Below, piece by piece: positions 13,269 through 63,147 of a stretch of 64,000 nucleotides of DNA. Each line of letters opens with the position of its first letter. Position 1 is the first letter of the stretch. The stretch covers positions 5,642,001 through 5,706,000 of the forward strand of contig NC_134031.1 in the NCBI RefSeq assembly GCF_964204645.1, written 5' to 3'. The notes beneath the pieces were generated by a model. It was not told where the DNA came from, searched no databases, and saw only the letters and a list, made by a program, of their open reading frames with translations. Source of the DNA: Tubulanus polymorphus (Eukaryota; Animalia; Nemertea). The position numbers and the translations under genes were made by a program.

Positions 13269-13321
13269 TTAAAACGAATACAAAAAACTGAAACACCAAA
13301 CGAAGATGCTTTAAAACTTAC

Positions 13322-13991
13322 CTATACATTGATGTTTGTTGGTCGCGGGCATGAACGCCGGCAAACACTGACAGCCGCCGCTGTTCAGATACCATTCTCC
13401 GTTCGCCTTACACTGATACGTCGGCTCCGACTCCATCGCCGAATTCGCCACGCATTCCCCGGTCGCCGGGTAAATCGACGACGAATCGGACCCGGTCGGC
13501 GTCGCGAGGAACTTCGCGAAATTCAACGTCACCTCCGGGCATATTTTGTAGTAAATCCTCACGGCGATCAACGTCACGCACGCGCCCATGTCCATGAACG
13601 CGAAGTAGACGCCCTTCTGGTTGATGGCGACGCTTCGCACCTCGGTGTTGATGACTGCGTTGTTGATGCTGCTGAATTTGCTGTCAGCGGCGACGACGTC
13701 GATGTGTCTATACGTGATCGTGTCCCAACGCGGCAACATCGAGTTCGCGTAGTCCGACTCGGCCTCGTAGTATAACAAATTGAACGTTTCTTTGCACTGT
13801 TGCAGGTTCTGCGGATCGGGGTACTGCGTACATTCGCGCATCGTGAATTTCATTTCGATGTACAAGCGCTTGGCGTTGCCGCGCGGTATGAAGGGAGTTC
13901 GAAGCCAGTTTTTCGATTCCTGTTGGTCTATCATGCACACCGTGTTGACCCTAACCGTGTCTAGCCCCATATTGAAACTGGCCTCCTGCCA
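13322..13991 (-). CDS. Eph: Eph receptor, coding exon 3 (ephrin-binding domain and Sushi/Cys-rich region)
   Basis: tttcag acceptor, 670 nt: WQEASFNMG...NWLRTPFI...KFTMREC...CKETFNLLYYE...GVYFAFMDMGACVTLIAVRIYYKICP...CQCLPAF; GTAAGT donor; phase 0/1. Hallmark Eph ligand-binding-domain motifs. Confidence 0.97.
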
Positions 13992-33600: not shown

Positions 33601-35824
33601 ATTGCCCCTCAAAGTTATTTGATAGGTCAATCAGGGAAGTGTGATGAGTCATCACAATTCCCTGGGTCAATCAATTTTGAAGTTTAGATATAGCGAGATG
33701 ATCGATTGGAATCTGACATGGTTTTATTTTTTTTCATGGTGTTCTTTCTACCAAAATGGATGTTTGAATAAATGTAAAGACCACGTTTGCATTTCTTTAT
33801 TAATAGAAATTACGATTTGAAAATACATTAATATTTCATCTCATAGACGAGAACCGCTCCTGGAGGTCCAGGAATTTACAGACGAAAGACATAATTAGAA
33901 GGGGATGGGGAAACTTTAATAAATAACCAAGCTATACTTTTAACGAACTGCCCATAGGGCTTATATTAATTATTGACCCTCGAGCTCACGATTGACCATG
34001 GTTACCGGTCATCGTTTTCTCAATGCGCCCATATTTGCCCAGAAGGCCCAATTTGCGTATTGACATTGATATAATACTAGCTACGATCGGAGACGTGTAT
34101 ATTCTATTGTCGGTGGTTATTTCCTTATCCCGCGGCTAAACTAAATTTGTTTCCTCAAATCCTCGTGGCAAACATTTATCTCGCGTATTCTCCATATTGT
34201 TAGGTATTGTCTATCGGTTAGGCATCTCATTGTATCGCCGCAGAACGGCGTTCCGTTTTAGAATTACCAACTTTTAATCTTCATTGTAAATACTGTACGC
34301 GTTAAACCGAGTCCCACTTGATGTAACTAAGGTATCGATCAGATAATAATTGCGGGCCGTCAACAACTTTTGTCTTCGGTCTCGTGGACAATGGGATTTG
34401 GGATATAGGGATGAGCGGTGGTTACCGGGCTTCCTTTTAACTTCCGAAATGACCAACGCTTCTCTTTCTTGCATCATTCCGGTCCAAAATTGGAGACAAT
34501 TTGCGATTTTGGAGATTCTAACTCCAACGTTATTACAACATAGACCCCCACGAAGTAGAGATCCTATTAACTGTGGCTGGATTTGGCTATTCCTCAAAAT
34601 GGACCTCTATTAGTATTATTGGTATTCGGTGTCACCACTATTTGCCCTTATTTCAGAAAACAAATTTAAGCCCGAATAGAATATTACGTAAGATATGAAA
34701 TTCAGTTCATTTCTAAATACACGGCAAACAGCAAATGGAAAATTTGATGTGTAACGTGCATTAGCTGTGTACACATTATTTCCGTGCGACAGTCATCTTT
34801 AACTCGGAATTAACTTCGCTTTTCACAATAAGGACAATATATCTGTCAACACGAAGTGGGCTGCACCGTAGGTGCGTTGGAACATATGGTCTGCAAGTCC
34901 ACTCGGTTCCGCCGAGCGAAACATTCAAGTGGCATCCTACAGAGGGTCTGATTGTCCCTTGTACGTAGTTGCGTGTTATATGGCTCTCGATTCTTAATCA
35001 CAGTTACTTTTCATTATTTTCTGTACAACGAGAACCCCGCGCCGGTACAACGTTGTCATGGAAAATCACAGTGACTCTTGAGAAACATTTATTGTCTATA
35101 CATATACTATGGGTCTTATTTGGTCACTTGAAGCAGAGAAGGTCAAGAGTCTTCTTTGCAAATTTTCTGGTCGATAAAACATTATGCAAGTTTGACCAGA
35201 CAAAATGCATTGACGTAAATAAAACACTTATTTCGCACGGTTTTGCGATTTTCGTGTCTGAATGTCGAAAAACCATTAGACCGCAAAGGCGGTATATAAA
35301 ATATCTTATTTTGCATTCTGCTAATACGGATGGCGACCAGATTTGAGTTTATTTGTTAATTAGCGACAAGATACGACTCGCTTTCCGCTATTGTTTGAAC
35401 AACTCTTCTCATAAATGATATCTCGTATTTGTACACTCCGACTTACACAAGTATTAATATCGTGGAGTAGGTATATTGCTCATGGAGGAGACGTATAAGC
35501 CGGTTCGGAAGTATTAGGCCGGTCCTCGAATTGGTCACTTCTAACCTCGTTGACAACTCTTGACGGTTGATACCGTAGACAAGACGTCTCCGAAATCTGT
35601 TTACAGAATTTCTGTCTAATCAGTTTTACGCGGAGTAATAAGTATTTAACCAAATAGCTTATCCGTCATCAAAGACCGATGAATATCTATGTGAAAATGA
35701 CATAATCATTTCCATGTTGTGTATAATATGTTTGAAGAACGATTACATACATATGATATGAATCTATTATGAAACCGGATAGGAGTTCAATGGGACGACA
35801 TTTCAACGTTTCGCGCTTTGTCAT

Positions 35825-35994
35825 CATTTACTCTAAAACGATGAGTTTTTGTCGTTTTTGAATCCATGCTATCATCAATATTACTTCATTTTTTCCATTT
35901 TCTTCCAACGATATTAATTTGTCTTCTGGTATTTTGAACAACTCAGTTTCGGTAGCCCAAAGCGTGGGTTCTAAAACGATTAATAGAGTCCATG
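35825..35994. mobile_element. Two degenerate hairpin mini-elements (35825-35868 and 35963-35994)
   Basis: Both end in GARTCCATG and contain CTAAAACGAT. Flanks are ttgtcat/ctatcat (5/7) and cccaaag/cctaaag (6/7). Confidence 0.65.
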
Positions 35995-36965
35995 CCTAAA
36001 GTGATCATACTCATGATTCCCAGTTGAAGCGGATCCCAGTCAAACTCAAACGATCCATGCTTTAACTCAAATGGGGAGGGGGGCTTGGGGTGGTCGTGTT
36101 GGTTGCTTTTCATGGAAACAAAACACATCTAGAATTTGGAGATAAATTTCTATTCATATATACAACTATTTTCTTTCTTGAAATAGTTACAGTTGATCAA
36201 TTCGACTTGACGCTTATCCGGTGTGTCCCTGCCGGGAACGAGACAGGAGTTCGATTTTGTGAACTCGTGAATCAGATAATATAATCGAATCTTCGGTTGA
36301 ATTTACATAATTTATTTTCCTTCGAACCAGAATTGTCAAGCGACTTGTTTGGGTTTAAATTTTCTTGGCTACCCGATTTGATACATCGCGATTATATATA
36401 CATCTTTTGAATACACACGGGTGTAATGAATGTTCGAGTGGTAATCGAGTCTGTTCGGATACTGATAAAATCAGTGCGATATTTGAGCCAATATTTAACT
36501 CTTATCTATATATGTCACCGGGCCTCCTAGAATATCATATTCGCAATATATAGCAAATCAATTAATATTTCATTCCCCGAATTGATTCCGTGTTCGAATG
36601 AGTTTTATCTTTACTCATCAGAGCGAACTGTGTTAGTCCTGATAAAAACCTTCTCAATCTGTGAAATTGGAAATCGAATATGAGTCGGTGAGATAGATTC
36701 GGCTTGTTCATATATATGAAATCTATTACACTGTATGAACTAATTCAAGAAACAAACCCCTCATTTATACAAGAAAGCTAACTTGAAACATAATACATAT
36801 GTATTGTTTGATATTGGTAGAATAGCCACAATCAAACGTGAAGAGAGAAAGATATAATAAAAACCCACTATTTACAGATTAGTAGTATCAAAAACCGATA
36901 ATTTATTGAATCAAAAAATATATCAAAAGACTTTTCGAACTATCCCTAGTGATCATCGTCAGGTG

Positions 36966-37301
36966 TTGCTTAATATTGTCGACAAAAAATTAAAAGATGT
37001 AAATCACATAATATCAAGCATCAATGAAGTTTTTTGAATCTATAGATAATTGAATTGACCGGTAACCAGTCTATAGACCCGTTACATTGATGACGTAGTA
37101 CACAAAATGCTCTCAGATATCAATTATCAAAAAGGCACGCAAATGTATCAATTTGAAAATAGGAGTCATGAAACATGTTTAATTACAAAATGAATGCCAT
37201 AATAATAATAGTTGTTTTGAAACGCCAGTATTAACGAAGCCTTAATAACTCATGGTAGATGTTTGTAAACATTATGGATGGTGGTTTTTACGGCGTCAAA
37301 A
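36966..37301 (-). mobile_element. MITE family A copy
   Basis: Ends ttttacggcgtcaaaa; shares aattgaccggtaaccagtctata and cattgatgacgtag. Confidence 0.7.
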
Positions 37302-39076
37302 CATCCGCAAAGAAACTAAGCCTGTAGGACTATCTAGAAACTAAATTTCCATTACTGATGGTAAAATCGATGGTGACAATTCGCATTTCATAGTTTTGAG
37401 ATTTCATAAAACCACCTGGTAATGGCTGAGGAACTTTATTCATTTTATCCCAATATCCCAAGCGTCGAAAACACTGCGTATATTCAAGCAAGGAACAAGT
37501 AATAAAACCATCAAATGGAATAAATATGCTCCGCACAAAAAGATTTATATTTTGAAGAAACCCATTTATAACAAGTCCGGCCCTTCTTAACTACTATATC
37601 TACCATACGAAATGCCCAGTGGTAGATCCGTCCAGTTTGACCTGTCCCTTGCGTATAGACTTGCGCTCAAAAATCATTCACCCGTCTAAATACAATTTCA
37701 ATTCAACGTTACTAATGAGGAAGCTGCGAATATATTACGATAGAACGAAATGTTTTTCTGAACAACACAATATGGGCATTCCCACACCTCGGTGGCGAAC
37801 CCGGTATTCGATTTAGTCTGCGTATAGTGTTTACGGTGAATTTACGATGAATTGTTCGCCTACAATGTTCAAGCTATTAGACGACAATAGACGCATACTT
37901 CAAAAATCATCTATCTGAAAATCCGTATAACGAGAATTTAAATGGGACGATATAACTTTACAGTCAAAAACGTAAACAGAAAGGACACGTTAAGTCGTTA
38001 TTTTATGTCGGTATCCTATTAGTAGTTTTGCATTTAATCGGACAGACACTCTTGTACAAGTGTTATCAAAATTGCTTATAAAATCGTGAAAATTTTGATC
38101 AAATCTACGATTTTTGACTCAATATTGTTCACGGTGTTATATTATTGACGTAGATCTACTTTATTGATAAATTTATGACTACGGGAAGTTATGTCTTCAA
38201 TGTTTTGGCGATGATTTCTTAGAAAGGTGTTAAGCAATTTTCCTAACATGTTATTTTATGTTGATTCTGGTAATTCTGTCGTTGTTGTGGTTTTGGTTTC
38301 AATCTCGATAATGAACTTTGGTCACTTACACGTTTCTAACCACAGTAGCAACCCGGACACACTGCTGTTTACATATGAAAATAGATCTTCTCTACGAGCT
38401 CACCGGACCCGATGGAAAAACCACAGCCGTATCAAATCACATCTCATTCACAAACCACAAAATCTTCAAACATTTCCGTTATTCAATGCCAAAGTTTGTG
38501 ATTACAAATTGACTCTGGGCTTACGCTTCGAGGGACGAAACCGAGTAAATAAAGCTACCCCATCAACTTGATATTTCTGTTTTTTCAACATGTAATTTTG
38601 TATTAAATTATTTTGTTAAGATTTGAAATTGTGATTATCTGTCATACAAGTGTAGTACACACTTTGATAAAGAATAAACTACTACTACTACCATGAATTA
38701 ATTTGACTTTTGTGTAAGATTATTTCAATTATGTATTGTATTACGGAATTAAAATCCAGCTTCTGAATGTTTTCATTTTTTCAATTGCTAACCAGTTTTA
38801 TTTCAATTTTTCACCAGCCCATGTTCTACAGTTTGACTATGGAATCAGTTACTCAATCATGTACGAATCATTTACGTGTATTTGAGTCTAAGTGAGTTCT
38901 TTTCCAATCTTAGCATTGAAATCAAATCTTAACCTACATGTGGAACATGTTTCTGAACTTACTAATCTTATGAATTGCTAGCCAGGGCCCACGCAGATTC
39001 AGAGCCAAGCATCTGAATGTAGCGACGTGATTCCGAGTCAAATCTAAATTTACAACCTAGGTAATGTTAGATCGAG

Positions 39077-39108
39077 CATGGACGTATAATCTAGTTTATA
39101 CGTCCATG
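39077..39108. mobile_element. 32-bp hairpin mini-element (CATGGA...TCCATG), 7-bp TSD GATCGAG
   Basis: gatcgag|CATGGACGTATAATCTAGTTTATACGTCCATG|gatcgag; an identical element is at 50344-50375. Confidence 0.85.
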
Positions 39109-50418: not shown

Positions 50419-53316
50419 GTAGCACGGATGAAACAGGAGTGTTTCAAGAGCTTGTTTGAATACATCGACGTTCCAACTGGTGATGACTGTTTGTCAACAG
50501 CCGAAACGTTGTGGTTTCGTTTTAATGAATTATATATCGTATGAATATTCGAATTTTGGGACTTCTTCGATTATCTAGAGTGTACACGGATAAGAGTGTT
50601 TCATTCGACTAACTATCGACAGACATTGATGTATGCAAATAAATGCTCCAAATGATCTTAATATCGAGTTTCTTTCTCAATAGAGTTCGGCTCAGATGGT
50701 TCGGTAGATTCAGATACTACCTTCGCAACTTGTGAAAATCGTGACAGGTTTGTAAATTTCGCTATAAAGATATTGGGAAATTCCGTTACCATAGATACAT
50801 AAAAATAGGTGCAGCGAAGGCAAATTTGCCTGCTATCCCGAGAGAGGAGAATAGCGCGCTACGGTGACTGCCAACTTCAAAGGGCATGCTTTTAAGAATA
50901 TGTGCATTCTACGGAAAAGGTGTAAGGTTGTCAAATTCAACAATTACTATTAAAAAAATTATGAGTAGTGACATTTCAAATCATATCATTTCAACTCATT
51001 TCGGCTCATAGCATCAATATTCCCGTATATTCCCTAATAGTGTATATACATTATATACATTATGTTATTTCGGTTGCTCTGATGATGGAGTTTAGTCAAA
51101 AAATTTCAGAAAATGAATAATTTGAATCATCAACTTTGGGTTTTCACTTATCAACAAATTTCAAACAAAATTATAGGTTTTCTCTCTGAATTGAATCATA
51201 GACAGTCACCAAGTTTGGTTAATGTAGGCTAAGAATAGAATCTATGCATATATGGGAACATATAGCGAACGATTCGGTATAGAAAGAAATGCATGCAGAT
51301 AGTTTGTCACGGAATGCCTGTTGATTAGATTGTAGTGATGGGAATATTACGTGACTTGCGTCGCAAAATAACCAGACCAGCGCTTTGCGCTAATGAACGC
51401 GACCAATTACCCAAAATAACCCCTACGTTTTTCTATTGAACGTATGGCCAACTGAATATTGCCTGTTGTTAGAGTTGAGATAAATCACCTGTTCATCGGC
51501 GTTGCTTTCAAGTATTTGAAAATGTAGTTTGGCCCATTACTTTACCAGGATCAAACCAAACTCCTCTTCGGGCGCGTCGCGTCGCAGGAAGTACATGTAC
51601 AACTCACTGCGACTGGCGCTGGTGGTCGTGTCGCAGTGAGTCGCAAGCTGTGGTCCTTGTCGTCGTTTCAGGGAACAACTTGTCTTACAACTTTCATAAC
51701 ACACAAATATGATAAATGACGCTTAAGATGGCATCTTTTTCATCCATTAATAACTTATTGTTAGGATCCTCAGTATCCACCGTTGTTATCCTTTTTTTCA
51801 AAATACATAAAAAGAATTGATTCAAATTGTTTGTTTTAAAAGTAGTTCATAGTTTTCGTCGAAAAGCAAGCCTATATTGTTTGAATAAATATGAATTGAA
51901 TTGAATCAATCGTTAAACTATATACGGGCGGTTGGTGATTAAAGAATGGCTTCGGGTCTATGGATTAAGGGGAGTTTCGGGCCACGCCTCGGGTCATTCT
52001 GCCCTCCACTGCATCGATGATCTATTTTCGTCGGCATATCCCATCAAAGCCAACAATTGAACTATTATTCTGTGTTTTTGTTGTTGTTTTTCCATTGAAA
52101 ACGTCAGTTTGCGAAAATTGAAACTCGAAACTATGAATAAAACAAAGACGAGTGCGCCGCTAAAGCCCTGCCGATATGAAAACGGATATCTCAGAAAAAA
52201 ATGTTAATTTGATTGCTTTCCTCGGCCATGCATTGATCTGATAAATCTGACCGCCATACACAATGCAAAGACAGCCCGAGGATCGAGTGCCGCTCCGCGA
52301 ACGCCAGCTTTTCATTTTTGTATGCCATAGGCTTGAATTTTTTGATCGGGGTCTACATCTGCTACTTGCTTTTGATCTCATGAAACTATAAACGACAAGG
52401 AAATGATGTTTGGCATGGAAAGTAACATCGAGTATGTGAAGGAGAGGTCTCTCGCGCCGGGAAGGAGCCAATCAGCGTAAAGCATGAGCACGTATTAACT
52501 TCTACCTCGATAAACAAAATTGTCCCCATGTCACGCGTTATCATGGGCTAAGTCAGTTTCGAGTGCAAGTCAGACTTTATTTACCCCTTAACCTGTTCCT
52601 CAGTTGTGTATACATTTCGGTCCAGCTTGATTCAATTCTTCCCCCAGGTTGACCAACAGTTACCAATTTGATTTTGAATGGGCCAAGAGGGTCGTTTCAT
52701 AGAATGACTTAAGCTTCGTTTAAAGAAACCATTACCTCAGTGACAAGCACTTTCATCACGCGGGTCTTGAATTTCCAATCTATACAAACACGTGGCTTAC
52801 TAAAGCGTCGGCGATATATCTTAATCTTATAGCATTTACTTTTCTCTAGAGGTCAAAACTCGATGAGTTTAAACTGAAAGCAATTTTTCCCCGATCAAAC
52901 TGTTTCGGCGCGCGAAGGTTCGATGAACGCGCGATGAATAAACGATCAACACTTTTTAATCGTTCTACGAACACTCCGCCGCTATTCTCGTCTGAATTGA
53001 CGCGGAAAATCGCGATGAAAATCGCCGCCAAAAAATCGACGACTTCTGAGCAGCATTCGAGTTAAACCGAGTGGATAATTGGAACAAATTGCGGTAGACG
53101 TCTTACATCGCTTTCACCGGGGCAACACAACGACCCGAGCGGGAACGGCTCGTGCGTCAATTCTATACAGGGATAAATGTCTTTAATCACGAAGTCACAG
53201 AGAAACTCTTTTTTCTTCCGAACCATTTATGTATGAAATGTACAAGGCAAATGAATGACTTTGAGGTCGTAACAGATCAATGAAAATTGAGTTCGAATAC
53301 GCATTTTTCATTCTTA

Positions 53317-53644
53317 GGGGCCGGTTTAGTTTTGTAGATCGGTTTTAACTATAACCCAGTCGGTTTGATAGACTGATATTATCTTTAACCCGGGGGCTAA
53401 ATGCTTTCATTTCCAATTGAGTTAACCCCGAGGTTCAAGTTAATACCGGTCTATAAACCTTGCCCCAGGGTCAGTTTGATAGACAGGTATTTACTTACTC
53501 CGGAGGCCCACTGAATTCAATTGGTTAGCCAACGGGTTTGAGTTAATACCAGTCTATAGAACAGGCCCCATCGTTAACAAAACTCGTCAAGTCAATTTAG
53601 TTAACTCCCGCGTTAACGTTGAAATTATTCTATAAAACTGGTCC
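53317..53644. mobile_element. Cluster of 2-3 palindromic Harbinger-like MITEs
   Basis: GGGCCGGTTT...CCTTGCCC|cag|GGTCAGTTTGATAGAC...GTCTATAGAACAGGCCC, followed by a partial third copy. Confidence 0.6.
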
Positions 53645-55804
53645 GAGAAGGGATGGTTGTGGTAATTCAACTCAAAGTTATGGAATGGAAAGGACAACTA
53701 CCGTATCGTATCGTATCATACCGTATCGTGTATTTGTGATGTAGGTGCTTGTCTTAAATAATTGCTCTTTGTAAGGATGCCGAAATAAAAAGAAGTATCA
53801 GTTAACGGTCATTTAGACGTGCTTCATAATCTAGAAACGTGGCACTAGTCGAAACAGTGTTTATCGTATTTCTGGGAGAATCACATATGATATGACATTC
53901 TACGAAGGTTAACCGCAAATTAGATACGTCCATCGGCCCCATTATCCAATCGGCTAGCTCCTCGGGCTCAAATTAATCAACTAACTCATTATGGGATACG
54001 GTGACGCAACGAATAAAAGTATATCACGTGGAGCAACAGTGCGCCCCTAGGTGTGAAACGTCGAAATCAAGCTCATTAGGCGCGGCAACAATGCTCGCAA
54101 ACTGAGACAAACTCGACAACTCGCGTCCTATAACAAAGTAGCAAATACGGCGTTAACGCCGGGATATTTGATGTAATTGTTCTTAACGTATAGGTGTTAA
54201 AATACCACAGGTGGAGTACTTCACATTACACGGCGCCCCGCTTCCAGGACGTCATGTTACCGATGGATTCCTCGGTGTCCATGGTAGAATCAACGGGTGC
54301 CTTATCTGGGATTCTAAAATCAACTAACACCTGGCATCCTATTTTTAAAGCCATCCTTTCGGAAAAACGTTTATATTAGCTATATAGATGAATACGGTGA
54401 TATTATGACTTTAGTGAACATTTCCAATTATTTTACGATGGTTTCTTATTGAGTTGTAGAAATATCTTCGAAACAAATTCAAAACCTGGGCTAGAAATTT
54501 CAATATATGTTATTCCGGTGGAACAAGCTATCAATAATGCCCCAAAATACGGCATAACATATAATCAAAAGGGCAAAAATAAACTTTTTGGAAATACAGA
54601 GAAAAGCTTATGAATTAAATTCGTTTAGGTATCGGTTTAATACGTATGTTTCATTTTGTCGTAACATTTCTGGGCAACTTAACATTTTAGGGGGAGAGTA
54701 CCCGCTGTCGCCCAGGACTCCCACTACGCGAGAGGGTTGACATGGTTTTGTTCTTGGGATTTAACATCTCCTGCAATGTTTCCGTTGAACCTATACAATT
54801 TTCCCATTCACTCTCTCCCCGTCTGATTACTATCCCACTCTCCTTCCCTCTCAACCCTCCTCTCTATCTCCCCTAGCCTCCCACATATACGCAGATACTC
54901 GTATATCCATATCGGATCGTTACGGATTAACGATTATTTTATGACGTCATAACTCGTGCTGGTGGGTACATATTTATAGCTTCACAGTTTCACACGACCG
55001 GTTTAAAGTACAGCGATCGCTAATGAAATGTATTCACGATCGATGCTACGTTTCGTAATGATAATTAACCTGTATCTATCTGTCATGGTTCATTCGGTGC
55101 CGGTTTAGCTCGGTTCCGATGGCCACGACACTTTCTGCAGTAAAATCGATTTCTAAAATTTACGATCTCCTATATATATATTCGAATCAGCGCGCGGCTG
55201 GGATCGAGTTAGAGATTAGTTCACTTTTAGTTGGAGTCGGATTTTGATCTTGAAATAGGGATTTCCATCGTATTCATTTGATTCAATTGCTTCGACCCAC
55301 CACACCTACCGGTAACAATGAAATAGGCTAATCGGAAAAAAAATGTACGGATATAATATAGTTGGATTTCTACCCACAGGCTCACAGTGAAATTGGAAAA
55401 TGGATTCCAATCGGTAATGCGTATGAGACATTATGATAGAAATTTCATAAGCCGAAGGGGGTCGCAAAATTGGATGTTCCATCCTGAGGATCACTAGCCC
55501 TGTGATGAGCACGCACATTATGCGAATACAGAGGGTAGCACCTGGCGCACGTTTACTCCGAAAATCCTTCCCGTAAAAGTTCGATCTGTAGGGCCTACAA
55601 TCTGAGGTCAGGGCTACTTATGTATTTTTCTTTGGTTGAAACTAGCCCAAATCCTTGAAAAATGACATCTACAGGGGCTTATCTTTACCTCTTCTTAATT
55701 GCCCTTTCGACTAGAACATAAAAATTCCAAAATTCATTTACCGGAAGTAGCTATTCTAAGGAACTATATATGATAATGAAAAAGTGGCTCATAAGCGCCA
55801 ACCC

Positions 55805-55825
55805 GTCTCTGTGGCGCAATCGGTC

Positions 55826-55871
<46 letters not shown>

Positions 55872-55878
55872 AGGGACG
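55805..55878 (+). tRNA. tRNA-Asn (anticodon GTT), copy 1
   Basis: GTCTCTGTGGCGCAATCGGTCAGCGCGTTCGGCTGTTAACCGAAAGGTTGGTGGTTCAAGCCCACCCAGGGACG; 74 nt, followed by a T5 run. Confidence 0.96.
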
Positions 55879-55913
55879 ACTAACTTTTTCTCTTTTGGCC
55901 ATTCTACCAACAA

Positions 55914-56066
55914 CTACAATGATTCCAGTGCCTAATATTGAAATACCATTTACATTAGACATTATCTTTAGAGGAAAATGCGATTCAGAGACTACGACTC
56001 CGAATCAAACCTACGAGGTGAGATACTTTTTCAGCAAAATCTTTTCGGTACAAGGGCTAAAAGCAA
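55914..56066 (-). pseudogene. Decayed duplicate of the Dispatched-like last intron/exon-10 junction
   Basis: Aligns by eye to 57313-57464 (caatgattccagWgcct..aaataccatttac..gactacgac..aacctacgaKgtgagata..ttcggtaMaagggctaaaagcaa). Reads ag/GCA CTG GAA TCA TTG TAG. Confidence 0.75.
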
Positions 56067-56205
56067 CGTTCTGTTTTCATATCTTAAAAATGGTAAGCCT
56101 AAAAAAATATATACCTTGTTTCTGATTTCTGCTGAGCATAAAACGTTGACTCAGCCGGACGCTTTTCCCTGTACATTACCTGTTTGAAATCATGATCAGG
56201 CTAGC

Positions 56206-56230
56206 CATGGACTCAAAAACAGAATCCATG
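56206..56230. mobile_element. 25-bp hairpin mini-element, 7-bp TSD GGCTAGC
   Basis: ggctagc|CATGGACTCAAAAACAGAATCCATG|ggctagc. Confidence 0.8.
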
Positions 56231-56410
56231 GGCTAGCCATCTACAATTTAATACGGGCATATCATGAAATATCTACATAATAAATTGTAACACGCAATCT
56301 GATCTTTACACCAGTACCCGACTAGAAAAAAGTTCTTTATCATTTACCGGAAGTTGCTATTCCAAGGAAATATAAATAAGAATGAAAAAGTGGCTCATAA
56401 GCGTCAACCC

Positions 56411-56431
56411 GTCTCTGTGGCGCAATCGGTC

Positions 56432-56477
<46 letters not shown>

Positions 56478-56484
56478 AGGGACG
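56411..56484 (+). tRNA. tRNA-Asn (anticodon GTT), copy 2
   Basis: Identical to copy 1, 606 bp downstream, followed by a T6 run. Confidence 0.96.
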
Positions 56485-56955
56485 ATTAATATTATCTTTT
56501 TTGGCCATTTTCTACCGACAAAAGTTTGTCAGAATCATTTCTAACTATTCGTTGACTGTTATTCTTATGTTTCGACATTCAATAAACGTTGATTTATGAA
56601 TGTTTCTGGTCGTGAGAGATATTACCTTGAGATAAACAGATATATATGTACATAAATATGCCATCATCTTACAATACCATTGATAAGGACAGGCATGCCT
56701 TGACTCAAATGATTAAACAAATGAACACGATATAACATATCAGTAACATCAATAAAATATAATGTCAAAAGAGAAAACACCAATTTACAAAAATAGAATA
56801 CATTTCGTATAACGTTAAACTTGCATAATCGTACGCCATCTAGTGGCAAATATTGCTCACAAACATCGAGATGCTAAACAAATTGTTACTGTTGTATGCA
56901 TTGAATATATATAACCTATAATTAATAAAAAAAAGAACGAATAGCACTTCTGAAT

Positions 56956-57327
56956 TTATCTTTTTAAGCAACATTTTTCTTTCAGAAAACGAAACAACGG
57001 TTTTATCGAACCCTTTTCCTTGTTAGGACCAGCTAGCGCCATGAAAGTGGTGAAAAAACCGATTGCAAAAACCCACGAAAATCCGATTGAGCAAAATAAA
57101 AACAGCCCGAACTGATAGTTGAACTGTATCCGGCAAAACAGCATGAAGAACGACGCGCCCAAGGTCGTTATGGCGCCAGCAGTAACCGAAATTCCAACTT
57201 CTTCCAGCATATTTTGAGTGCGCGACTTCCGGTCGTCGTACGGCGCGTAGTAATATCCTTCAGCGAGATGGACGATATAGTCCACGGATAGCCCGACTAC
57301 TAAACATAAATTCAATGATTCCAGAGC
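56956..57327 (-). CDS. Dispatched-like transporter, exon 10 (TM10-TM12, stop)
   Basis: tttcag / ALESLNLCLVVGLSVDYIVHLAEGY...GAITTLGA...GP...KCCLKR*; 372 nt. GxxxD motif in TM10. Summed exons give 3876 nt = 1291 aa plus stop. Confidence 0.95.
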   Translation of the reverse strand, partial: ALESLNLCLVVGLSVDYIVHLAEGYYYAPYDDRKSRTQNMLEEVGISVTAGAITTLGASFFMLFCRIQFNYQFGLFLFCSIGFSWVFAIGFFTTFMALAGPNKEKGSIKPLFRFLKEKCCLKR

Positions 57328-57599
57328 CTGAAATAGAAATACCATTTACGATGCTACCATATGTTCTCATATGAAACGGAGTGCTTAGACTACGACCTCG
57401 AATCCAACCTACGATGTGAGATATTTTTTACGCGAAATCTATTCGGTAAAAGGGCTAAAAGCAAAAATTGATACCATTATATTGTTTTATTAATTTTATC
57501 AATTCAAAATGTGACCCTGGACGATTATGAGAATCGAGGTATCATTTTATTTTAGCCTAAGTATTCGATAATCGCATGTTTGTATTAAAAAAAGTTTAC

Positions 57600-57770
57600 C
57601 CCGATTTTCCAGCCCGCGAGAGGAATGACTCCTACGACGCACACGGTAGTGAATGTGATAGTCAAAGTTGCAACGATTCCCGTAATGATATTCATAGTTC
57701 CGATCACTAGCACCGGGCACGCGACCAATATACCTATACCCAATCCGTATATAGCCTGATACACTAACGT
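57600..57770 (-). CDS. Dispatched-like transporter, exon 9 (TM8-TM9)
   Basis: ttccag / TLVYQAIYGLGIGILVACPVLVIGTMNIITG...VVGVIPLAGWKIG / GTAAAC; 171 nt, phase 0/0. Confidence 0.93.
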
Positions 57771-57899
57771 CTGGAATTTAAAAATACATATACACTATAC
57801 ATAGACAAATATTTCATGCAGTAACAGAAACGACTGTCAGACCAAGTCTGATACGAATAGATTCACGGTCTAGGCTCATATGGGGACAGATCAAACTGA

Positions 57900-58162
57900 A
57901 GCCAGTTGCTCTGAAGTTGGCTGAGATAGCCGGTGACGAATACCATATAAACGGGCGGCAGAATCGAAATTTAACGAGTCAAATGCATCCGAAAGACAAC
58001 CAAAATCTTTATCGTTTATATGATGGTTCATTTGTTGCCAATCATTTTTAGCAACAATGCAACAAAATACTTTAATAAAGATGGACTTTTAATAGTCACT
58101 ATATCCCAACGATCCGCTGGTTATTGTATAACCAACTTTTGTCGAATTTAAGCAACTGGCCC
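57900..58162. mobile_element. Harbinger-like MITE in Dispatched-like intron 8
   Basis: GCCAGTTGCT...AGCAACTGGC inverted ends. Confidence 0.55.
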
Positions 58163-58192
58163 CTCAGTCTGATTGCGGGATTCTAGCCTCAC

Positions 58193-58279
58193 CTTTTGAA
58201 TATTCATAGTGTGATACGCGTTCGGAGTGTCGGGAGTAGCGAGAAATCCGTTCTTCAATCCTGCGGGTAAATCATCATT
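58193..58279 (-). CDS. Dispatched-like transporter, exon 8
   Basis: ttttag / NDDLPAGLKNGFLATPDTPNAYHTMNIQK / GTGAGG; 87 nt, phase 0/0. 'PxGLxNGF' resembles the Dispatched motif just before TM8. Confidence 0.9.
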
Positions 58280-58748
58280 CTAAAACGTGGTAGAAATGAG
58301 AACTCGTTAAAATGCGGCGGACGTATTATTTTTAAGGATTAACTTAGGTCAGAAAACAAATACACTTCTGAAAGCTGTCGGCGTATTTAAAGGACCTGGC
58401 CCGTAGCATGGGAGATAAGGGGGTTACGACGAACCACCCGAAGTCTGAAAAAGTCGGGTCAGCTTTTTAAGTGGATTCATTGAAATTTACTAAAATCTCA
58501 GACTTGTCCTATGAACCCCTGGTCTTGTAGGCCTTCGTGACTGACATTGGACTCCATAGCCTTGAACCGCATTTGCGTCACGAGGCGACGTCGTTACCTT
58601 CGTGAACAGTCGTTTCAAAAAGGTCCATCAACGAAAGGTCACGCTAAGACCCGGTGATTAACTTGAGTCAGAAACCAAATACCATGAAAGCGGTTTAGAG
58701 AATTCAGCTTTAGAATGCGGATACAAAATTGAGATGCTGCCGACTCAC

Positions 58749-58876
58749 GATTTCGCGCATTAGATTTTCCCAATGTTGCATAATGGGTAAACCGGTTGCA
58801 TAGCTCATGCGTTTAGCGTTCAGTGTCGTGTTGAATCTGATGGCAAAATATTTCATTTGATTTCCGTAACTTTGAT
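58749..58876 (-). CDS. Dispatched-like transporter, exon 7
   Basis: tttcag / (Y)QSYGNQMKYFAIRFNTTL...QHWENLMREI / GTGAGT; 128 nt, phase 1/0. Confidence 0.88.
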
Positions 58877-58949
58877 CTGAAAAGAAGCATGTATTATATA
58901 GGGTATTCGTTATATCTCGGAAACCTATACGTACGTTTACAAGGCACTG

Positions 58950-59140
58950 ATTTTTCTGAAAAGAGATTTCTCGTGTGGCCTAGAACTTCAGAATCAGAAA
59001 ATAATCTCAGTAGATAGTTTAAAAGCCCCTTATTCCAATGGGATTTCTAGAAAAGAGATTTCTCGTGTGGCCTAGAACTTCAGAATCAGAAAATAATCTT
59101 ACTAAACAGTTCAAAAGCCCCTTATTCCAATGGAATTTTA
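58950..59140 (+). repeat. 92-bp tandem duplication in Dispatched-like intron 6
   Basis: gaaaagagatttctcgtgtggcctagaacttcagaatcagaaaataatct...aaaagccccttattccaatgg starts at 58958 and again at 59050. Confidence 0.85.
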
Positions 59141-59228
59141 GTAACCCGTTTCGCAATCAAACGTGTAAATGCATCCTTGGAATCGGTAGCAAAACTTGAT
59201 ACAAAAAGAAAACATACAAAATACTCAC

Positions 59229-59349
59229 AAACGCTCTGTATCGTTAGCGTGTGATTGGTTTTCCAGTGACCCAGCAATTTGCTAAAAGTGCTGTAGTCGT
59301 CAAAATTCGTCATTTTATAACCGTTGGCTAACCAATAATCTAATCCAAT
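59229..59349 (-). CDS. Dispatched-like transporter, exon 6
   Basis: ttacag / IGLDYWLANGYK...TIQSV+T / GTGAGT; 121 nt, phase 0/1. Confidence 0.85.
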
Positions 59350-59449
59350 CTGTAAAGGGTAAGGAAATGTATAATATATAGGTCTTATTTTAATATAACT
59401 AGGTATAAAGCACGAAATAAGGCATGATCTATGATGATGACGACATCAC

Positions 59450-59620
59450 CTCTAGCCAGTTGGTGAAATCGTTACTGAAATTCGCGTTTCGATAAATCCA
59501 CGGCAGGTGATTCATAAAAACCGTCATTTTTTCTTTAGTGATCGGAATACTCATGTCGACATTCGGTGGAAATACTGTCACATTCGGCATGGCGTTATAC
59601 GTCCGAGTTTTCACATGATT
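59450..59620 (-). CDS. Dispatched-like transporter, exon 5
   Basis: tttttaag / NHVKTRTY...FTNWLE / GTGATG; 171 nt, phase 0/0, after an 80-nt intron. Confidence 0.82.
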
Positions 59621-59700
59621 CTTAAAAAAATTCACGATAAATGAAATTTGCTGGAAGCAAAAGAATTATTCTTGGTTTTAAATGAAAAGGTATAACTTAC

Positions 59701-59826
59701 CAACATATACGATTCGAACTTATCCATGAAACACTCGACTTCCGGTTCACCGGATGTCAAGTTAACCTTGATCTTCAATCGATCGATTTCCGACGCTGAA
59801 AGCTCGCGAAGTCGTTTACACAAATT
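59701..59826 (-). CDS. Dispatched-like transporter, exon 4
   Basis: ttgcag / NLCKRLRE...ECFMDKFESYML / GTAAGT; 126 nt, phase 0/0. Confidence 0.9.
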
Positions 59827-60244
59827 CTGCAACGAAGAAATTAGAGCTGTGCATCCTTCGAAACATCACGATCTTATGAGGAGCATTGCTATTCACAGAG
59901 CCCATATACAGTCCAGTTACCCCGACTACGGACTTGATTGCCGATTCGGATCCAGCAGGTGGGCGATTGCGTAACTATGTGAATAGAATGGCCGGACTAA
60001 CTGATAAGTTTGTACTCCATTCTCTCCCTGTTCCCAGGACCATAGCAACCATTCATGTGGTTGTATCTGCACAGTGCTGCGATCTCTGTCGCTCTACGAT
60101 TGTACCCAACCACACACACGTAGGCCTTCACTCAAATTAACGTTATCACAATAAAATATGTCAATGTGTGGAAACTTCAGACACTAAGGTTTTTGGTGAA
60201 CTACAGACTTCGCAAAAAGTTGATCCATTTAATATAACTGAAAT

Positions 60245-60295
60245 CATGGTATCTCCTAAAACCCAAAAATAAACGAATTCTTTTTAGATTCCATG
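60245..60295. mobile_element. 51-bp mini-element in Dispatched-like intron 3, 7-bp TSD CTGAAAT
   Basis: ctgaaat|CATGGTATCTCCTAAAA...TTTTAGATTCCATG|ctgaaat. Confidence 0.78.
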
Positions 60296-60322
60296 CTGAA
60301 ATCTATATATATATATACATAC

Positions 60323-60559: not shown

Positions 60560-60638
60560 CTGAAACAAAAGGAAAATCGAGGTTTAACACAGAAAATTCG
60601 AAAACACGACATGAACTTATTCGAAGGATTTAGCATAC

Positions 60639-62488
60639 CTGTTCTTCGTCGTCTTCTAGTTGCGTACATGAATACGTAAATAGTCCGAGCATTGCTAGAA
60701 AAAGTAACAATATAATCCAGCGAAACACTTTATGATCGATCAACCTGAAATAAGGGCCGCCGAAAAATCGAACCAGAAGCATTTTCTTTTTTTCCGCGGG
60801 AACATCGGCAGTCGAATCCGCCGTATCCGGTACAACGTTCGGAAAGTCCACAACTGCGTTACTGTGCAGACAGGTTTCAATCGGTTCTAACTGTTTTTCC
60901 TGCGGCCGAGAGACGATCATTTCATCGAGGTTGAAAGCTTTATTTTCAATTCCAAACTTTTCCGTCGTTTCGTGGTCGAGCGATAATTTCTTGTACGCTA
61001 AAATCGACGGCAATTTAGATTGCGCATTTTTACCATCGGTTAATGAATATCGTTTTGTCCTCTGCTCTTCTTTCTGCGTTTTCCCTGAAAGCCGATTTTG
61101 GCCGATGTTTTCTATTTGATTCGAGTTAAGTTCGAAATTTGCGCACGGTCCTTTACAACAGCAACAACAACCGCATCGGCAGCAGCAACTACCGCACCTT
61201 CCTTCAAATTTTAGATGATAGATTATGATAACCGCGGGAAAGAACGTTATTACTGTTAAATAGTTAACTATTATTAGCAGCCCAGAAAATACGCCAAAAG
61301 ATTGGACCATCAACAGCGGTGAAAAAGCGCTGATGAAAAAAGCAATCATCGTTGTCAACGACGTAGCAAACATGGCGCCCGCCGCGCGCCTATACGCGTC
61401 GGACAGACGATGTTCCAAACTGGGATATCGTTTGAACTCCGTCGACCGCCAGGTGTCGTAGAATATGAACATGTCATCGGCGCCGATGCCGATAATGATG
61501 AAAATGGACAGAATATGGAACAAGCCGAAATACTGATAGCCGAACACGATTCGGTAAATCAGGTTCGAGATGACGAAACTGGAAAATACCCCGATCATAC
61601 CCCAGAACGATACCCAGGTTGACCTGGTATGAAACACAAGAAAGAATGCTATGAACAGAAAACTTCCGGCGGTCAAGGCCAAATCTTTATATGCTTGCGT
61701 TCGTATATCAGCAACGTATATCTTATCTTCAAAATAGTAAAGGCCTATGTGGCTCTCAAACCGATCCCTGAGATCTTCGATCAATGCGCGGAATTCTTTC
61801 TTCAGATAATTAAGGGCTATTTCTTTTAATTGAAACTGCGTGATCGAATGACGACTTCGATGTCCGTCGATCGGGGCTCCGGACGTGAAGAAACTTCTTA
61901 ACATTTTCGACCGGACCGGCGATCCCTCAACGACTTGACTATCGCTACCTAAATGCAATATAATTCCATTTCTTGTCTGGCTGTTGTTAAATGCCGATTT
62001 TATGACGTCATCGATATTATCGAAGTTTGGGTCGTAAAACACAGCGGATACTTTTTCATAAGTACCGTCGAAGAATCGAAGAACTGATGTAGGTTTGTCG
62101 CAGCTTTTATTCTGCAACAATCTACAATAGATTTTCCATTGAGGCTCATTGAATAGCTCGTTTTCAATATCTCGCATTCGTTTCAGCTGATCTCTAGTGA
62201 GCATGTTCTTCCGCACGGTCAGATCTTCGTAGTAAAGTTCGACGATTCTGTCCGGGAAACCCCGCGTCCACAGAGGCAACGACTTGTAATGGTCTATCGT
62301 GTATCTGTCGTGAAATCTGATTATGTCTCGGGAGTTGCGGTGGCGCCAGGTTTCGGCGGATTTGTAGGACTGGTGGTCGTGAAGGCTGACCGGAATCGAC
62401 TCGAAATCGATCGGCAGAACGTTGTATCCGATTCCGTAGAGAATTCCCGTGAACGCGGCGAAGAAAACGTGAAACGAAAGAAACAAAA
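60639..62488 (-). CDS. Dispatched-like transporter, exon 2 (TM1, first extracellular domain, sterol-sensing domain, cytoplasmic loop, TM7)
   Basis: ttgcag acceptor at 62489, 1850 nt, GTATGC donor, phase 1/0. Contains FIIIGIGADDMFIFYDTW (GxxxDD) and AMFATSLTTMIAF...FGVFSG, typical of the Dispatched/Patched SSD. Confidence 0.95.
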
Positions 62489-62538
62489 CTGCAACGAAAG
62501 AAACAGAAAAAAGCATGGTTATTTCATCATGAGTACAG

Positions 62539-63147
62539 CATGGGCGTCCCAGGGATTTTTTTTTTTTTGGGGGGGGGGGGTTCGTTTCTAGGATCCTGCC
62601 CCAGAAAACTTTTGAAAATTTCGTGCAAACAGGCGCGTTCTGGTGCAATCCGAGGCCGTCCGATCACGGGCCAATTTACCATTCGGCAGCAATTTCTATA
62701 GAGAGCGCTTATTCCAAACCGAGATCGCAGAATTGTGAAACGATAGGTAGACTGGTTCCCCTTTACTTTGCATGTATCGATTTCATTTTGCTTATTTAGC
62801 CATGTGCCGACGTTCGTCGACGTTTGAAAATTCATAAAAGGGGGTTCGTTCGAACTACCGAGCCCCGCTCGGGACGCCCATGACTCTCGACAAAGCTAAC
62901 GGGGTTTTCGGTACAGAATTCAGGCGGGGACATATTCCGAACAGGTTAATGAATATATGTATGTATAGCACACATGGGATTTTCTATACTAACGCCGTCT
63001 CTTTATCTTATATTCAAATTATCAATATGATGTCGCGTCTTGAGGAGTACCTACGATCCGGCAGACGATGTGCCGACGTTCGTCAACGTTTGAAAACTCA
63101 AAAAGGGTGTTCGTTCGTACTACTGGACCCTCCTAGGGACGCCCATG
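62539..63147. mobile_element. TIR element(s) CATGGGCGTCCC...GGGACGCCCATG in Dispatched-like intron 1, right end present twice
   Basis: Left TIR at 62539; right TIRs end at 62882 and 63147; ~80-bp direct repeat 62802-62882 vs 63068-63147. Confidence 0.7.

What the first reader, a model, noticed from the sequence alone, without database searches (positions are those of the whole stretch)
35825..60302. Family of ultra-short (25-61 bp) hairpin transposons with 7-bp target-site duplications
Seen: about ten elements start CATGGA (or a decayed form) and end TCCATG. They are little more than two inverted ends and are flanked by 7-bp direct repeats that differ at each locus: GATCGAG (39077-39108), GTCGCAC (50344-50375), GTTTAAC (49443-49503), GGCTAGC (56206-56230, only 25 bp), CTGAAAT (60245-60295), CCYAAAG (35963-35994), YTRTCAT (35825-35868). 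The 32-bp copies at 39077 and 50344 are identical but have different TSDs, which implies recent independent insertion. Established: CAT termini and 7-8-bp TSDs with quasi-palindromic GT..AC targets characterise the P-element superfamily. Inference: these are minimal P-like non-autonomous elements mobilised in trans. They are far shorter than typical MITEs, and short enough that conventional pairing of both ends on one linear DNA looks sterically hard, so a hairpin/cruciform or otherwise unusual mechanism is possible. Standard repeat finders would probably miss them.
Basis: partly seen in the sequence, partly recalled or inferred. Interest (0 to 1): 0.8.

Follow-up and report, generated by a model that had tools for sequence, protein, structure and literature searches.

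The report
Excision scars of P-type transposons
The tiny 25-61-base "hairpin transposons" are real and far beyond chance, but they are the scars that P-element-type jumping genes leave when they cut themselves out, not a new kind of ultra-short mobile element; this scan had already reached the same reading on other DNA of this genome.

Summary
Observation confirmed. The window holds 5 exact N7-CATG...CATG-N7 units against 0.05 expected, and about 12 when decayed copies and a CAGGG-ended one are counted. All lie between 33.6 and 60.3 kb.

Genome-wide, each family is a set of hundreds of junctions. The outer 12-20 nt of both ends are constant and the centre varies: blunt joins, 1-4-nt microhomologies and filler. 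Every locus has its own 7-bp duplication.

Two families have full-length parents in this genome, each with a P-type transposase:
- a 5,890-bp element with perfect 31-bp inverted ends and a 7-bp duplication;
- a young 5.5-kb element with at least 40 near-identical copies.

Scars keep at most 18-20 nt of those ends. The identical 32-mers are the product expected when two 20-nt single-stranded tails anneal in their best register. Published Drosophila P excision junctions show the same pattern with 17-nt tails. No parent was found for the 32-mer family, and the 61-bp palindrome is a single-copy oddity.

This is a known mechanism in a new host. Earlier notes of this scan on the same genome (s1-516460 and others) reached the same reading.

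The parts
33625..33671 (.). Family D scar: 33-bp CAGGG...CCCTG unit (33632-33664) between exact 7-bp duplications GGTCAAT.
   Evidence: The same termini occur on about 252 ends genome-wide, including 2.15-kb and 5.5-kb elements.
35818..35875 (.). Old, decayed family-B-like scar: 44 bp (35825-35868), flanking 7-mers match 5/7.
   Evidence: Both ends match the B terminus with 2 mismatches.
35956..36001 (.). Decayed family-B-like scar: 32 bp (35963-35994), flanking 7-mers match 6/7.
39070..39115 (.). Family A scar: canonical asymmetric 32-mer (39077-39108) between exact GATCGAG duplications.
49409..49540 (.). Compound scar at one re-used target 7-mer, GTTTAAC. An 88-bp unit (49416-49503) lies between exact duplications. 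It contains a 19-nt stub and the 61-bp near-perfect palindrome (49443-49503), and a 15-nt stretch occurs twice inside it. A 30-bp B-like scar (49511-49540) follows and lacks its right duplication.
   Evidence: The palindrome is single-copy in the genome.
50337..50425 (.). Two scars in tandem that share the 7-mer GTCGCAC three times (the third copy has 1 mismatch): family A 32-mer (50344-50375) and family B 36-mer (50383-50418).
   Evidence: The right end of the 36-mer matches the first 18 nt of the family B parent end.
56199..56237 (.). Family-B-like scar: 25 bp (56206-56230) between exact GGCTAGC duplications. It lies among exons of a Patched/sterol-sensing-domain gene.
60238..60302 (.). B-like scar with filler: 51 bp (60245-60295) between exact CTGAAAT duplications.

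Best explanation
The units are donor-site scars of cut-and-paste P-superfamily transposons.

Proposed sequence of events:
1. A full-length or internally deleted P-type element inserts and duplicates 7 bp of a palindromic target.
2. On excision the transposase cuts the transferred strand at the element tip and the other strand 18-20 nt inside the inverted end.
3. Each flank therefore keeps its 7-mer plus an 18-20-nt 3' single-stranded tail of end sequence.
4. End joining closes the break. The tails are joined blunt, aligned on 1-4-nt microhomologies and extended, or bridged by short, often templated, filler.

The result is 7-mer, left stub, right stub, 7-mer, 25-50 bp in all, and palindromic because the ends are inverted repeats.

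Shown here: the parents, the duplications, the target motif, the empty paralogous sites, the junction spectrum and the cap on retained length.

Inferred: the exact stagger (20 nt in family A, 19-20 in B, 18-19 in D) and the repair pathway.
For: Family A (the 32-mers):
- 299 ends carry the 18-mer terminus.
- 44 distinct units of 17-132 bp have constant outer ends, a variable centre and a different 7-mer at each locus.
- Among ends with the full 20-mer, the recurrent classes are 40 (20+20 blunt), 38, 33, 32 and 29 bp. Longer units are mostly 20 + filler + 20.
- These classes are among the registers in which the 3' terminal base of a 20-nt tail is paired. The 32-bp register is the best, with 6 of 8 bases paired, and extension from it gives the window's asymmetric 32-mer exactly.

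Family B:
- The parent lies at G000 C3:13541828-13547717. It is 5,890 bp with perfect 31-bp ends and a GGTAAAC duplication.
- Its 771-aa ORF carries the TNP-like RNase H and GTP-binding insertion domains and matches P transposase 6P5A at E 6e-13.
- Of 321 ends with the 16-mer, only 12 keep 20 nt, and 3 of those belong to long copies.

Family D:
- 252 ends were found. More than half of the listed ends continue as the parent end. Pairs lie 2.15 kb apart, and one pair lies 5,511 bp apart around a P transposase ORF.
- The short units keep at most 18-19 nt.

Insertion-site evidence:
- 16 copies of a host repeat hold a single 7-mer, against at least 13 copies with the 32-mer plus a duplicated 7-mer.
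- The target motif is palindromic and extends outside the duplication.

Literature:
- Drosophila P cuts with a 17-nt stagger (PMC7776569).
- Its excision junctions show the same classes: a recurrent 2-nt microhomology join, blunt 17+17 joins, and templated inserts between full tails (PMC2895639, Tables 1-3).
Against: - No full-length parent was found for family A. The only lead is an end at C2:10098912, about 2 kb upstream of a decayed P transposase fragment.
- The 61-bp palindrome keeps about 30 nt per arm, more than a 20-nt tail allows. It needs repair synthesis or another origin.
- The stagger differs between families and is read from scars, not measured.
- The class counts for families A, B and D were read by eye from the first 100 rows of the listings, not from a full genome parse.
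- Pfam detected no THAP domain in either parent ORF.
Confidence: 0.9

Rival explanations
1. One reading: the 25-61-bp units are minimal non-autonomous P-like transposons. They are excised and re-inserted as units by a transposase supplied in trans, perhaps through a hairpin or cruciform intermediate.
For: - There are 38 exact copies of the 32-mer, at least 15 of them at unrelated loci with their own 7-bp duplications.
- A few point variants recur at two loci.
- Active P transposase sources exist in the genome.
Against: - 13 of the 30 fetched exact copies are one scar copied along with its host repeat.
- The family is not homogeneous. Units of 29, 31, 32, 33, 36, 38 and 40 bp and filler-containing units are all built from the same two stubs.
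- Recurrence follows the paired-3'-end registers of two 20-nt tails.
- Scars keep only 18-20 of the 31 end bases and no internal sequence. Drosophila P needs internal transposase-binding sites (PMC7776569).
- By inference, with a 20-nt stagger the two inner cuts in a 32-bp unit would pass each other. That would leave two unpaired 12-nt strands rather than an excised element.
- The 61-bp unit is single-copy.
Confidence: 0.04
2. The units are internal-deletion derivatives made in place by aborted homologous gap repair. Synthesis is copied from a sister or homologous copy, interrupted and then joined, so the breakpoints are not set by the cleavage site.
For: - This route is known for P elements and makes the 2.15-kb family D derivatives plausible.
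- It would explain the 61-bp palindrome, whose 30-nt arms are about as long as the 31-bp end of family B.
- An untested first-reader note of this scan reports relics that keep 31 bp per end (s1-496844).
Against: - In family B almost nothing keeps 21-31 nt: 12 of 321 ends reach 20 nt and 3 of those are long copies.
- In family A the sequence beyond nt 20 differs at every locus.
- Breakpoints set by interrupted synthesis should be spread along the end and the interior.
Confidence: 0.05
3. The units are chance palindromes or products of a process unrelated to transposons.
For: None beyond the short length of the units.
Against: - Shuffle controls give 0-0.05 against 5-6 observed.
- Backwards-read control patterns give 0 hits genome-wide.
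- Parent elements share the termini.
Confidence: 0.01

Closest known systems
Drosophila melanogaster P-element excision footprints (P{wa} donor-site junctions, Chan, Yu and McVey 2010, PMC2895639; 17-nt staggered cleavage, PMC7776569)
   Same: Both target-site duplications are kept and flank stubs of the two inverted ends. Stub length is capped by the cleavage stagger. The same few microhomology joins recur, and there are blunt tail-to-tail joins and short templated inserts between full tails.
   Different: The duplication is 7 bp instead of 8, and the tails are 18-20 nt instead of 17. Here the scars are natural germline relics, hundreds per family, in a non-insect animal. The transposases are distant (E 6e-13 to 6P5A) and Pfam detects no THAP domain.
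Galileo and 1360/Hoppel, the P-superfamily families with 7-bp duplications (PMC3698922)
   Same: 7-bp target-site duplication and a P-type transposase.
   Different: Their ends and sequences are different. Kinship beyond the superfamily level was not tested.
BuT5, a MITE mobilised by a P element (PMC3698922)
   Same: It is non-coding and shares its termini with a P element.
   Different: BuT5 is about 1 kb and homogeneous in length. It keeps the subterminal transposase-binding region. The units here are 25-61 bp, heterogeneous, and lack everything beyond nt 18-20.
Footprints of Tc1/mariner and hAT transposons
   Same: They are donor-site scars of cut-and-paste transposition.
   Different: From general knowledge, those scars are only a few bp long because the stagger is 2-3 nt or goes through a flank hairpin. 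They do not look like small inverted-repeat elements.

Membership tests
P-superfamily DNA transposon (the parent elements) | Transposase with a P-type RNase H catalytic domain interrupted by a GTP-binding insertion domain | tested here: met
   Family B ORF L070:676-2991(-) matches PF21787 (2.4e-23), PF21788 (5.1e-22) and PF21789 (weak), and PDB 6P5A at 6e-13. Family D ORF L066:295-2148(+) matches PF21787 (2.4e-26) and PF12017 (below cut-off).
P-superfamily DNA transposon (the parent elements) | N-terminal THAP DNA-binding domain | tested here: inconclusive
   The long ORFs gave no THAP hit, and neither did small ORFs of the family B element. The N-terminus of the family D ORF gives a sub-threshold zf-AD hit. 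Upstream exons were not reconstructed.
P-superfamily DNA transposon (the parent elements) | Terminal inverted repeats of about 31 bp with CA...TG tips and a 7-8-bp target-site duplication | tested here: met
   Family B has perfect 31-bp ends and a GGTAAAC duplication. The two ends of family D elements share at least 33 nt. 7-bp duplications are known for 1360 and Galileo (PMC3698922).
P-type excision footprint | Both duplication copies are kept and flank only terminal stubs of the two ends | tested here: met
   Paralogous empty sites with one 7-mer were found.
P-type excision footprint | Retained end length is capped at the cleavage stagger, shorter than the inverted repeat | tested here: met
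   In family B, 12 of 321 ends reach 20 nt and only the long copies go further. In family A the sequence diverges after nt 20 at every locus and filler sits between two full 20-mers. In family D the short units stop at 18-19 nt. Counts were partly read by eye from the first 100 rows.
P-type excision footprint | Junction spectrum of end joining: microhomology, blunt joins, templated filler | tested here: met
   compared with PMC2895639 Tables 1-3.
P-type excision footprint | A parent element with the same termini is present in the same genome | tested here: inconclusive
   Met for families B and D. Not met for family A or for the 61-bp unit.
P-type excision footprint | The same locus is occupied by the long element in another haplotype or individual | not testable with these tools
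   Only one assembly is available.
MITE (miniature inverted-repeat transposable element) | Copies are homogeneous in length and internal sequence and differ mainly by point mutations | tested here: not met
   Lengths run from 17 to 132 bp with indel and filler variation in the centre. There are many junction classes.
MITE (miniature inverted-repeat transposable element) | Keeps the complete ends and the subterminal sites that the transposase needs | tested here: not met
   Only 18-20 of the 31 end bases remain and no subterminal sequence. That these sites are required is taken from Drosophila P (PMC7776569).

The most novel reading that the evidence does not exclude
Some scars, for instance the 32-mers, might still be recognised by a P-type transposase and moved as units. 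They would then be the shortest eukaryotic transposons known. My evidence makes this unnecessary and mechanically awkward but does not formally exclude it for every copy.
Probability: 0.04. Interest if true: 0.85.

Novelty: new member of a known kind. Interest (0 to 1): 0.3.

Why it matters
It corrects an attractive but wrong reading. These 30-40-bp units with inverted ends and target duplications look like ultra-short MITEs and could be annotated as such, yet they record past insert-and-leave cycles.

Three modest points of value remain:
- The long staggered cut, known biochemically only from the Drosophila P element (17 nt), can be read from natural scars in a distant animal. It appears to be 18-20 nt, depending on the family.
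- The scars preserve a natural spectrum of germline end-joining products: paired-3'-end registers, blunt joins and templated filler.
- The 27-kb stretch of this window was hit at least a dozen times by several P families, twice at one re-used 7-mer. This suggests an insertion hotspot or local hopping.

Tried and rejected
Later genome-search runs returned no loci. I therefore could not fetch the ends of the family D copies, the flank of the candidate family A end at C2:10098912, or a larger parsed sample of scars.
- Search for a family A parent. No family A end lies within the 1.5-kb flanks of 22 P-transposase loci. The first 100 of 190 full 20-mer ends share no extension. Three ends without a nearby partner have unique interiors. 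A weak end-like motif in L077 was not convincing.
- The young transposase family L064-L066 was tested as the family A parent. Its copy positions do not coincide with family A ends. It turned out to be family D.
- Search for further copies of the 61-bp palindrome found none.
- THAP domain searches were negative.
- I scanned about 255 kb of other fetched loci for untargeted scars. Only one turned up, in a locus (L021) that overlaps the window's own compound scar at 49416-49503. I use this only as a rough sign that the window is unusually dense.
- A 19-nt tail model for family A was rejected. It predicts 34- and 27-bp classes that I did not see, and it does not give the 32-, 33- and 38-bp classes as paired-end registers.
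- The organism was not identified here. Earlier notes call it a ribbon worm.
Full report
**1.

The window has 5 exact cases of a 7-mer, CATG...CATG of up to 400 bp, and the same 7-mer again. Dinucleotide shuffles give a mean of 0.05 and a maximum of 1. Fifteen other palindromic 4-mers used as the core gave 0 or 1.

Allowing one mismatch in the ends and the 7-mer gives 10 against 0.33. Allowing CA.GG...CC.TG tips gives 6 against 0.0 and adds a CAGGG-ended 33-mer at 33632-33664.

Further decayed or compound units lie at 49416-49434, 49511-49540 and 50383-50418. All lie between 33.6 and 60.3 kb; none lies in the first 33 kb.

**2. The 7-mers are true target-site duplications**

The window is C7:5642001-5706000 of a 268-Mb, 77-contig animal assembly. 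The 32-mer has 38 exact copies, and a backwards-read control gives none.

Of 30 copies fetched, 13 sit at the same place in one host repeat. At least 15 others each have their own 7-bp duplication. The same host repeat also exists in 16 copies with a single 7-mer and no insert, so paralogous empty sites exist.

Twenty-nine independent sites give a palindromic target motif that reaches beyond the duplication. T is at 83% two positions before it, A at 83% three positions after it, and the 7-mer has the form G/C-T-T-n-A-A-C/G. A transposase made these sites.

**3. The units are a junction spectrum, not a family of copies**

For family A, 299 ends carry the 18-nt terminus. In the fetched loci they form 44 distinct units of 17-132 bp. 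The outer ends are constant, the centre varies, and the 7-mer differs at each locus.

The listing of ends that keep the full 20 nt (CATGGACGTATAAACTAGAT) shows a few recurrent classes and many singletons:
- 40 bp: two full 20-mers joined blunt.
- 38 bp: a 2-nt overlap.
- 33, 32 and 29 bp.
- Longer units: usually 20-mer, 1-9 nt of filler, 20-mer.

Beyond nt 20 the sequence differs at every locus.

I then asked which alignments of two 20-nt 3' tails pair the terminal bases. The registers are 21, 25, 29, 31, 32, 33, 36 and 38 bp. The 32-bp register is the best long one, with 6 of 8 bases paired. Extending the unprocessed 3' end in that register gives exactly the asymmetric 32-mer of the window, in either orientation. 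Trimming the two mismatched terminal bases first gives the perfect-palindrome 32-mer, which is also common.

Identical 32-mers at unrelated loci are therefore the expected repeated outcome of one repair reaction. They are not evidence of copying. A 19-nt tail fits the classes worse.

**4. Parents exist for two of the families in the window**

*Family B.* This terminus has 11 matches in the window and 321 ends with the exact 16-mer genome-wide. Most of these are again 22-40-bp junctions.

A full element lies at C3:13541828-13547717. It is 5,890 bp with perfect 31-bp inverted ends and a GGTAAAC duplication on both sides. Its 771-aa ORF has the TNP-like RNase H and GTP-binding insertion domains and matches the Drosophila P transposase structure 6P5A at E 6e-13.

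Only 12 of the 321 ends keep 20 nt of the 31-bp end, and 3 of those belong to long copies.

*Family D.* This is the CAGGG terminus of the unit at 33632. It has 252 ends, and more than half of the listed ones continue as a common end of at least 33 nt. Pairs of ends lie about 2.15 kb apart. One pair lies 5,511 bp apart (C4:10190125-10195635) and encloses locus L065 with a P-type transposase ORF.

A 120-bp piece of this element has at least 40 copies at 99-100% identity, so the family is young. Its short units stop at 18-19 nt.

The genome has at least 20 matches to the P transposase RNase H domain.

**5. Comparison with what is known**

Drosophila P transposase cuts with an unusually long 17-nt stagger. 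It needs internal binding sites, makes 8-bp duplications and tends to hop locally (PMC7776569).

Sequenced donor-site junctions after P{wa} excision consist of the duplication plus up to 17 nt of each end. They include one 2-nt microhomology join recovered many times, blunt 17+17 joins, and templated inserts between full tails (PMC2895639, Tables 1-3).

That is the anatomy seen here, with 7-bp duplications and 18-20-nt stubs. Seven-bp duplications are known in the P superfamily from 1360 and Galileo (PMC3698922).

**6. Why unit mobility is unlikely**

- The scars lack 11-13 nt of the inverted end and all subterminal sequence.
- By inference from the stagger, the two inner cuts in a 32-bp unit would pass each other, leaving two unpaired 12-nt strands.
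The identity is explained without mobility.

**7. What remains open**

- No parent was found for family A. The one lead is an end at C2:10098912, about 2 kb from a decayed transposase fragment.
- The ratio of exact to one-mismatch 32-mers suggests a few percent divergence. This is my rough estimate, so the parent may be extinct.
- The 61-bp palindrome is single-copy and keeps about 30 nt per arm, close to a full inverted end. The 88-bp unit around it holds a 15-nt internal duplication. Repair synthesis followed by joining is the likeliest origin, but this is inference.
- Stagger values are indirect, and several class counts were read by eye from truncated listings.

**8. Context**

The scars lie between and within an Eph-receptor gene and a Patched/sterol-sensing-domain gene. 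Two target 7-mers were used repeatedly (49409-49540 and 50337-50425).

About 255 kb of other fetched loci held no untargeted scar of their own. The single non-central hit was in a locus that overlaps the window. Together these points suggest a local hotspot, but only roughly.

Earlier notes of this scan on other DNA of the same genome proposed the same reading. One follow-up (s1-516460) reported an 18-nt stagger from about 120 scars. My family D data agree with 18-19 nt, and family A points to 20.

**9. Verdict**

The P-superfamily link is right and the "ultra-short transposon" reading is not supported. This is a known mechanism in a new host, and interest is low to moderate.

Noticed in passing
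L016:1493-1588 (G000 C5:24572294-24572374): Two family A 32-mers lie 17 bp apart in opposite orientation with exchanged duplications. The outer left 7-mer is the reverse complement of the inner right one, and the same holds the other way round. The 17-bp piece between them is therefore inverted. This points to a micro-inversion between two adjacent insertions or scars, or to an aberrant two-copy transposition.
   Followed up: partly
G000 C4:10190125-10195635; loci L064, L065, L066: Family D looks recently active. At least 40 copies of a 120-bp piece are 99-100% identical, a 2.15-kb deletion derivative is the commonest form, and a 5.5-kb copy carries the transposase ORF (617 aa as listed in the twin copy L066). 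Its N-terminus gives a sub-threshold zf-AD hit rather than a THAP hit.
   Followed up: partly
L083:2042-2287 (+), inside the family B parent: An 81-aa ORF with a C2H2 zinc finger lies on the strand opposite the transposase inside the 5.9-kb element. It may be a second gene or may be chance.
   Followed up: no
host repeat around L001:1501 and 12 other loci; empty copies listed: A dispersed repeat acquired a family A scar and then multiplied. At least 13 copies are filled and 16 are empty. This dates family A activity to before part of that repeat's spread.
   Followed up: partly
window 33600-60300 versus 1-33000: All scars of at least three P families lie in the second part of the window, and two 7-mers were hit more than once. 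This may be an insertion hotspot or local hopping. The two exact 32-mers are 11.3 kb apart, whereas I estimate about 0.06 such pairs by chance among 38 copies.
   Followed up: partly
window 13311-13970 (-); 56956-57345 and 60630-62648 (-): There is an exon encoding an Eph-receptor ligand-binding and cysteine-rich domain. There are also exons of a Patched/NPC1-like protein with a sterol-sensing domain. The scars at 56206 and 60245 lie among the latter.
   Followed up: no
window 49416-49503: A 15-nt stretch of the right arm of the 61-bp palindrome is repeated in the 19-nt stub to its left. This looks like templated filler from synthesis-dependent end joining.
   Followed up: no
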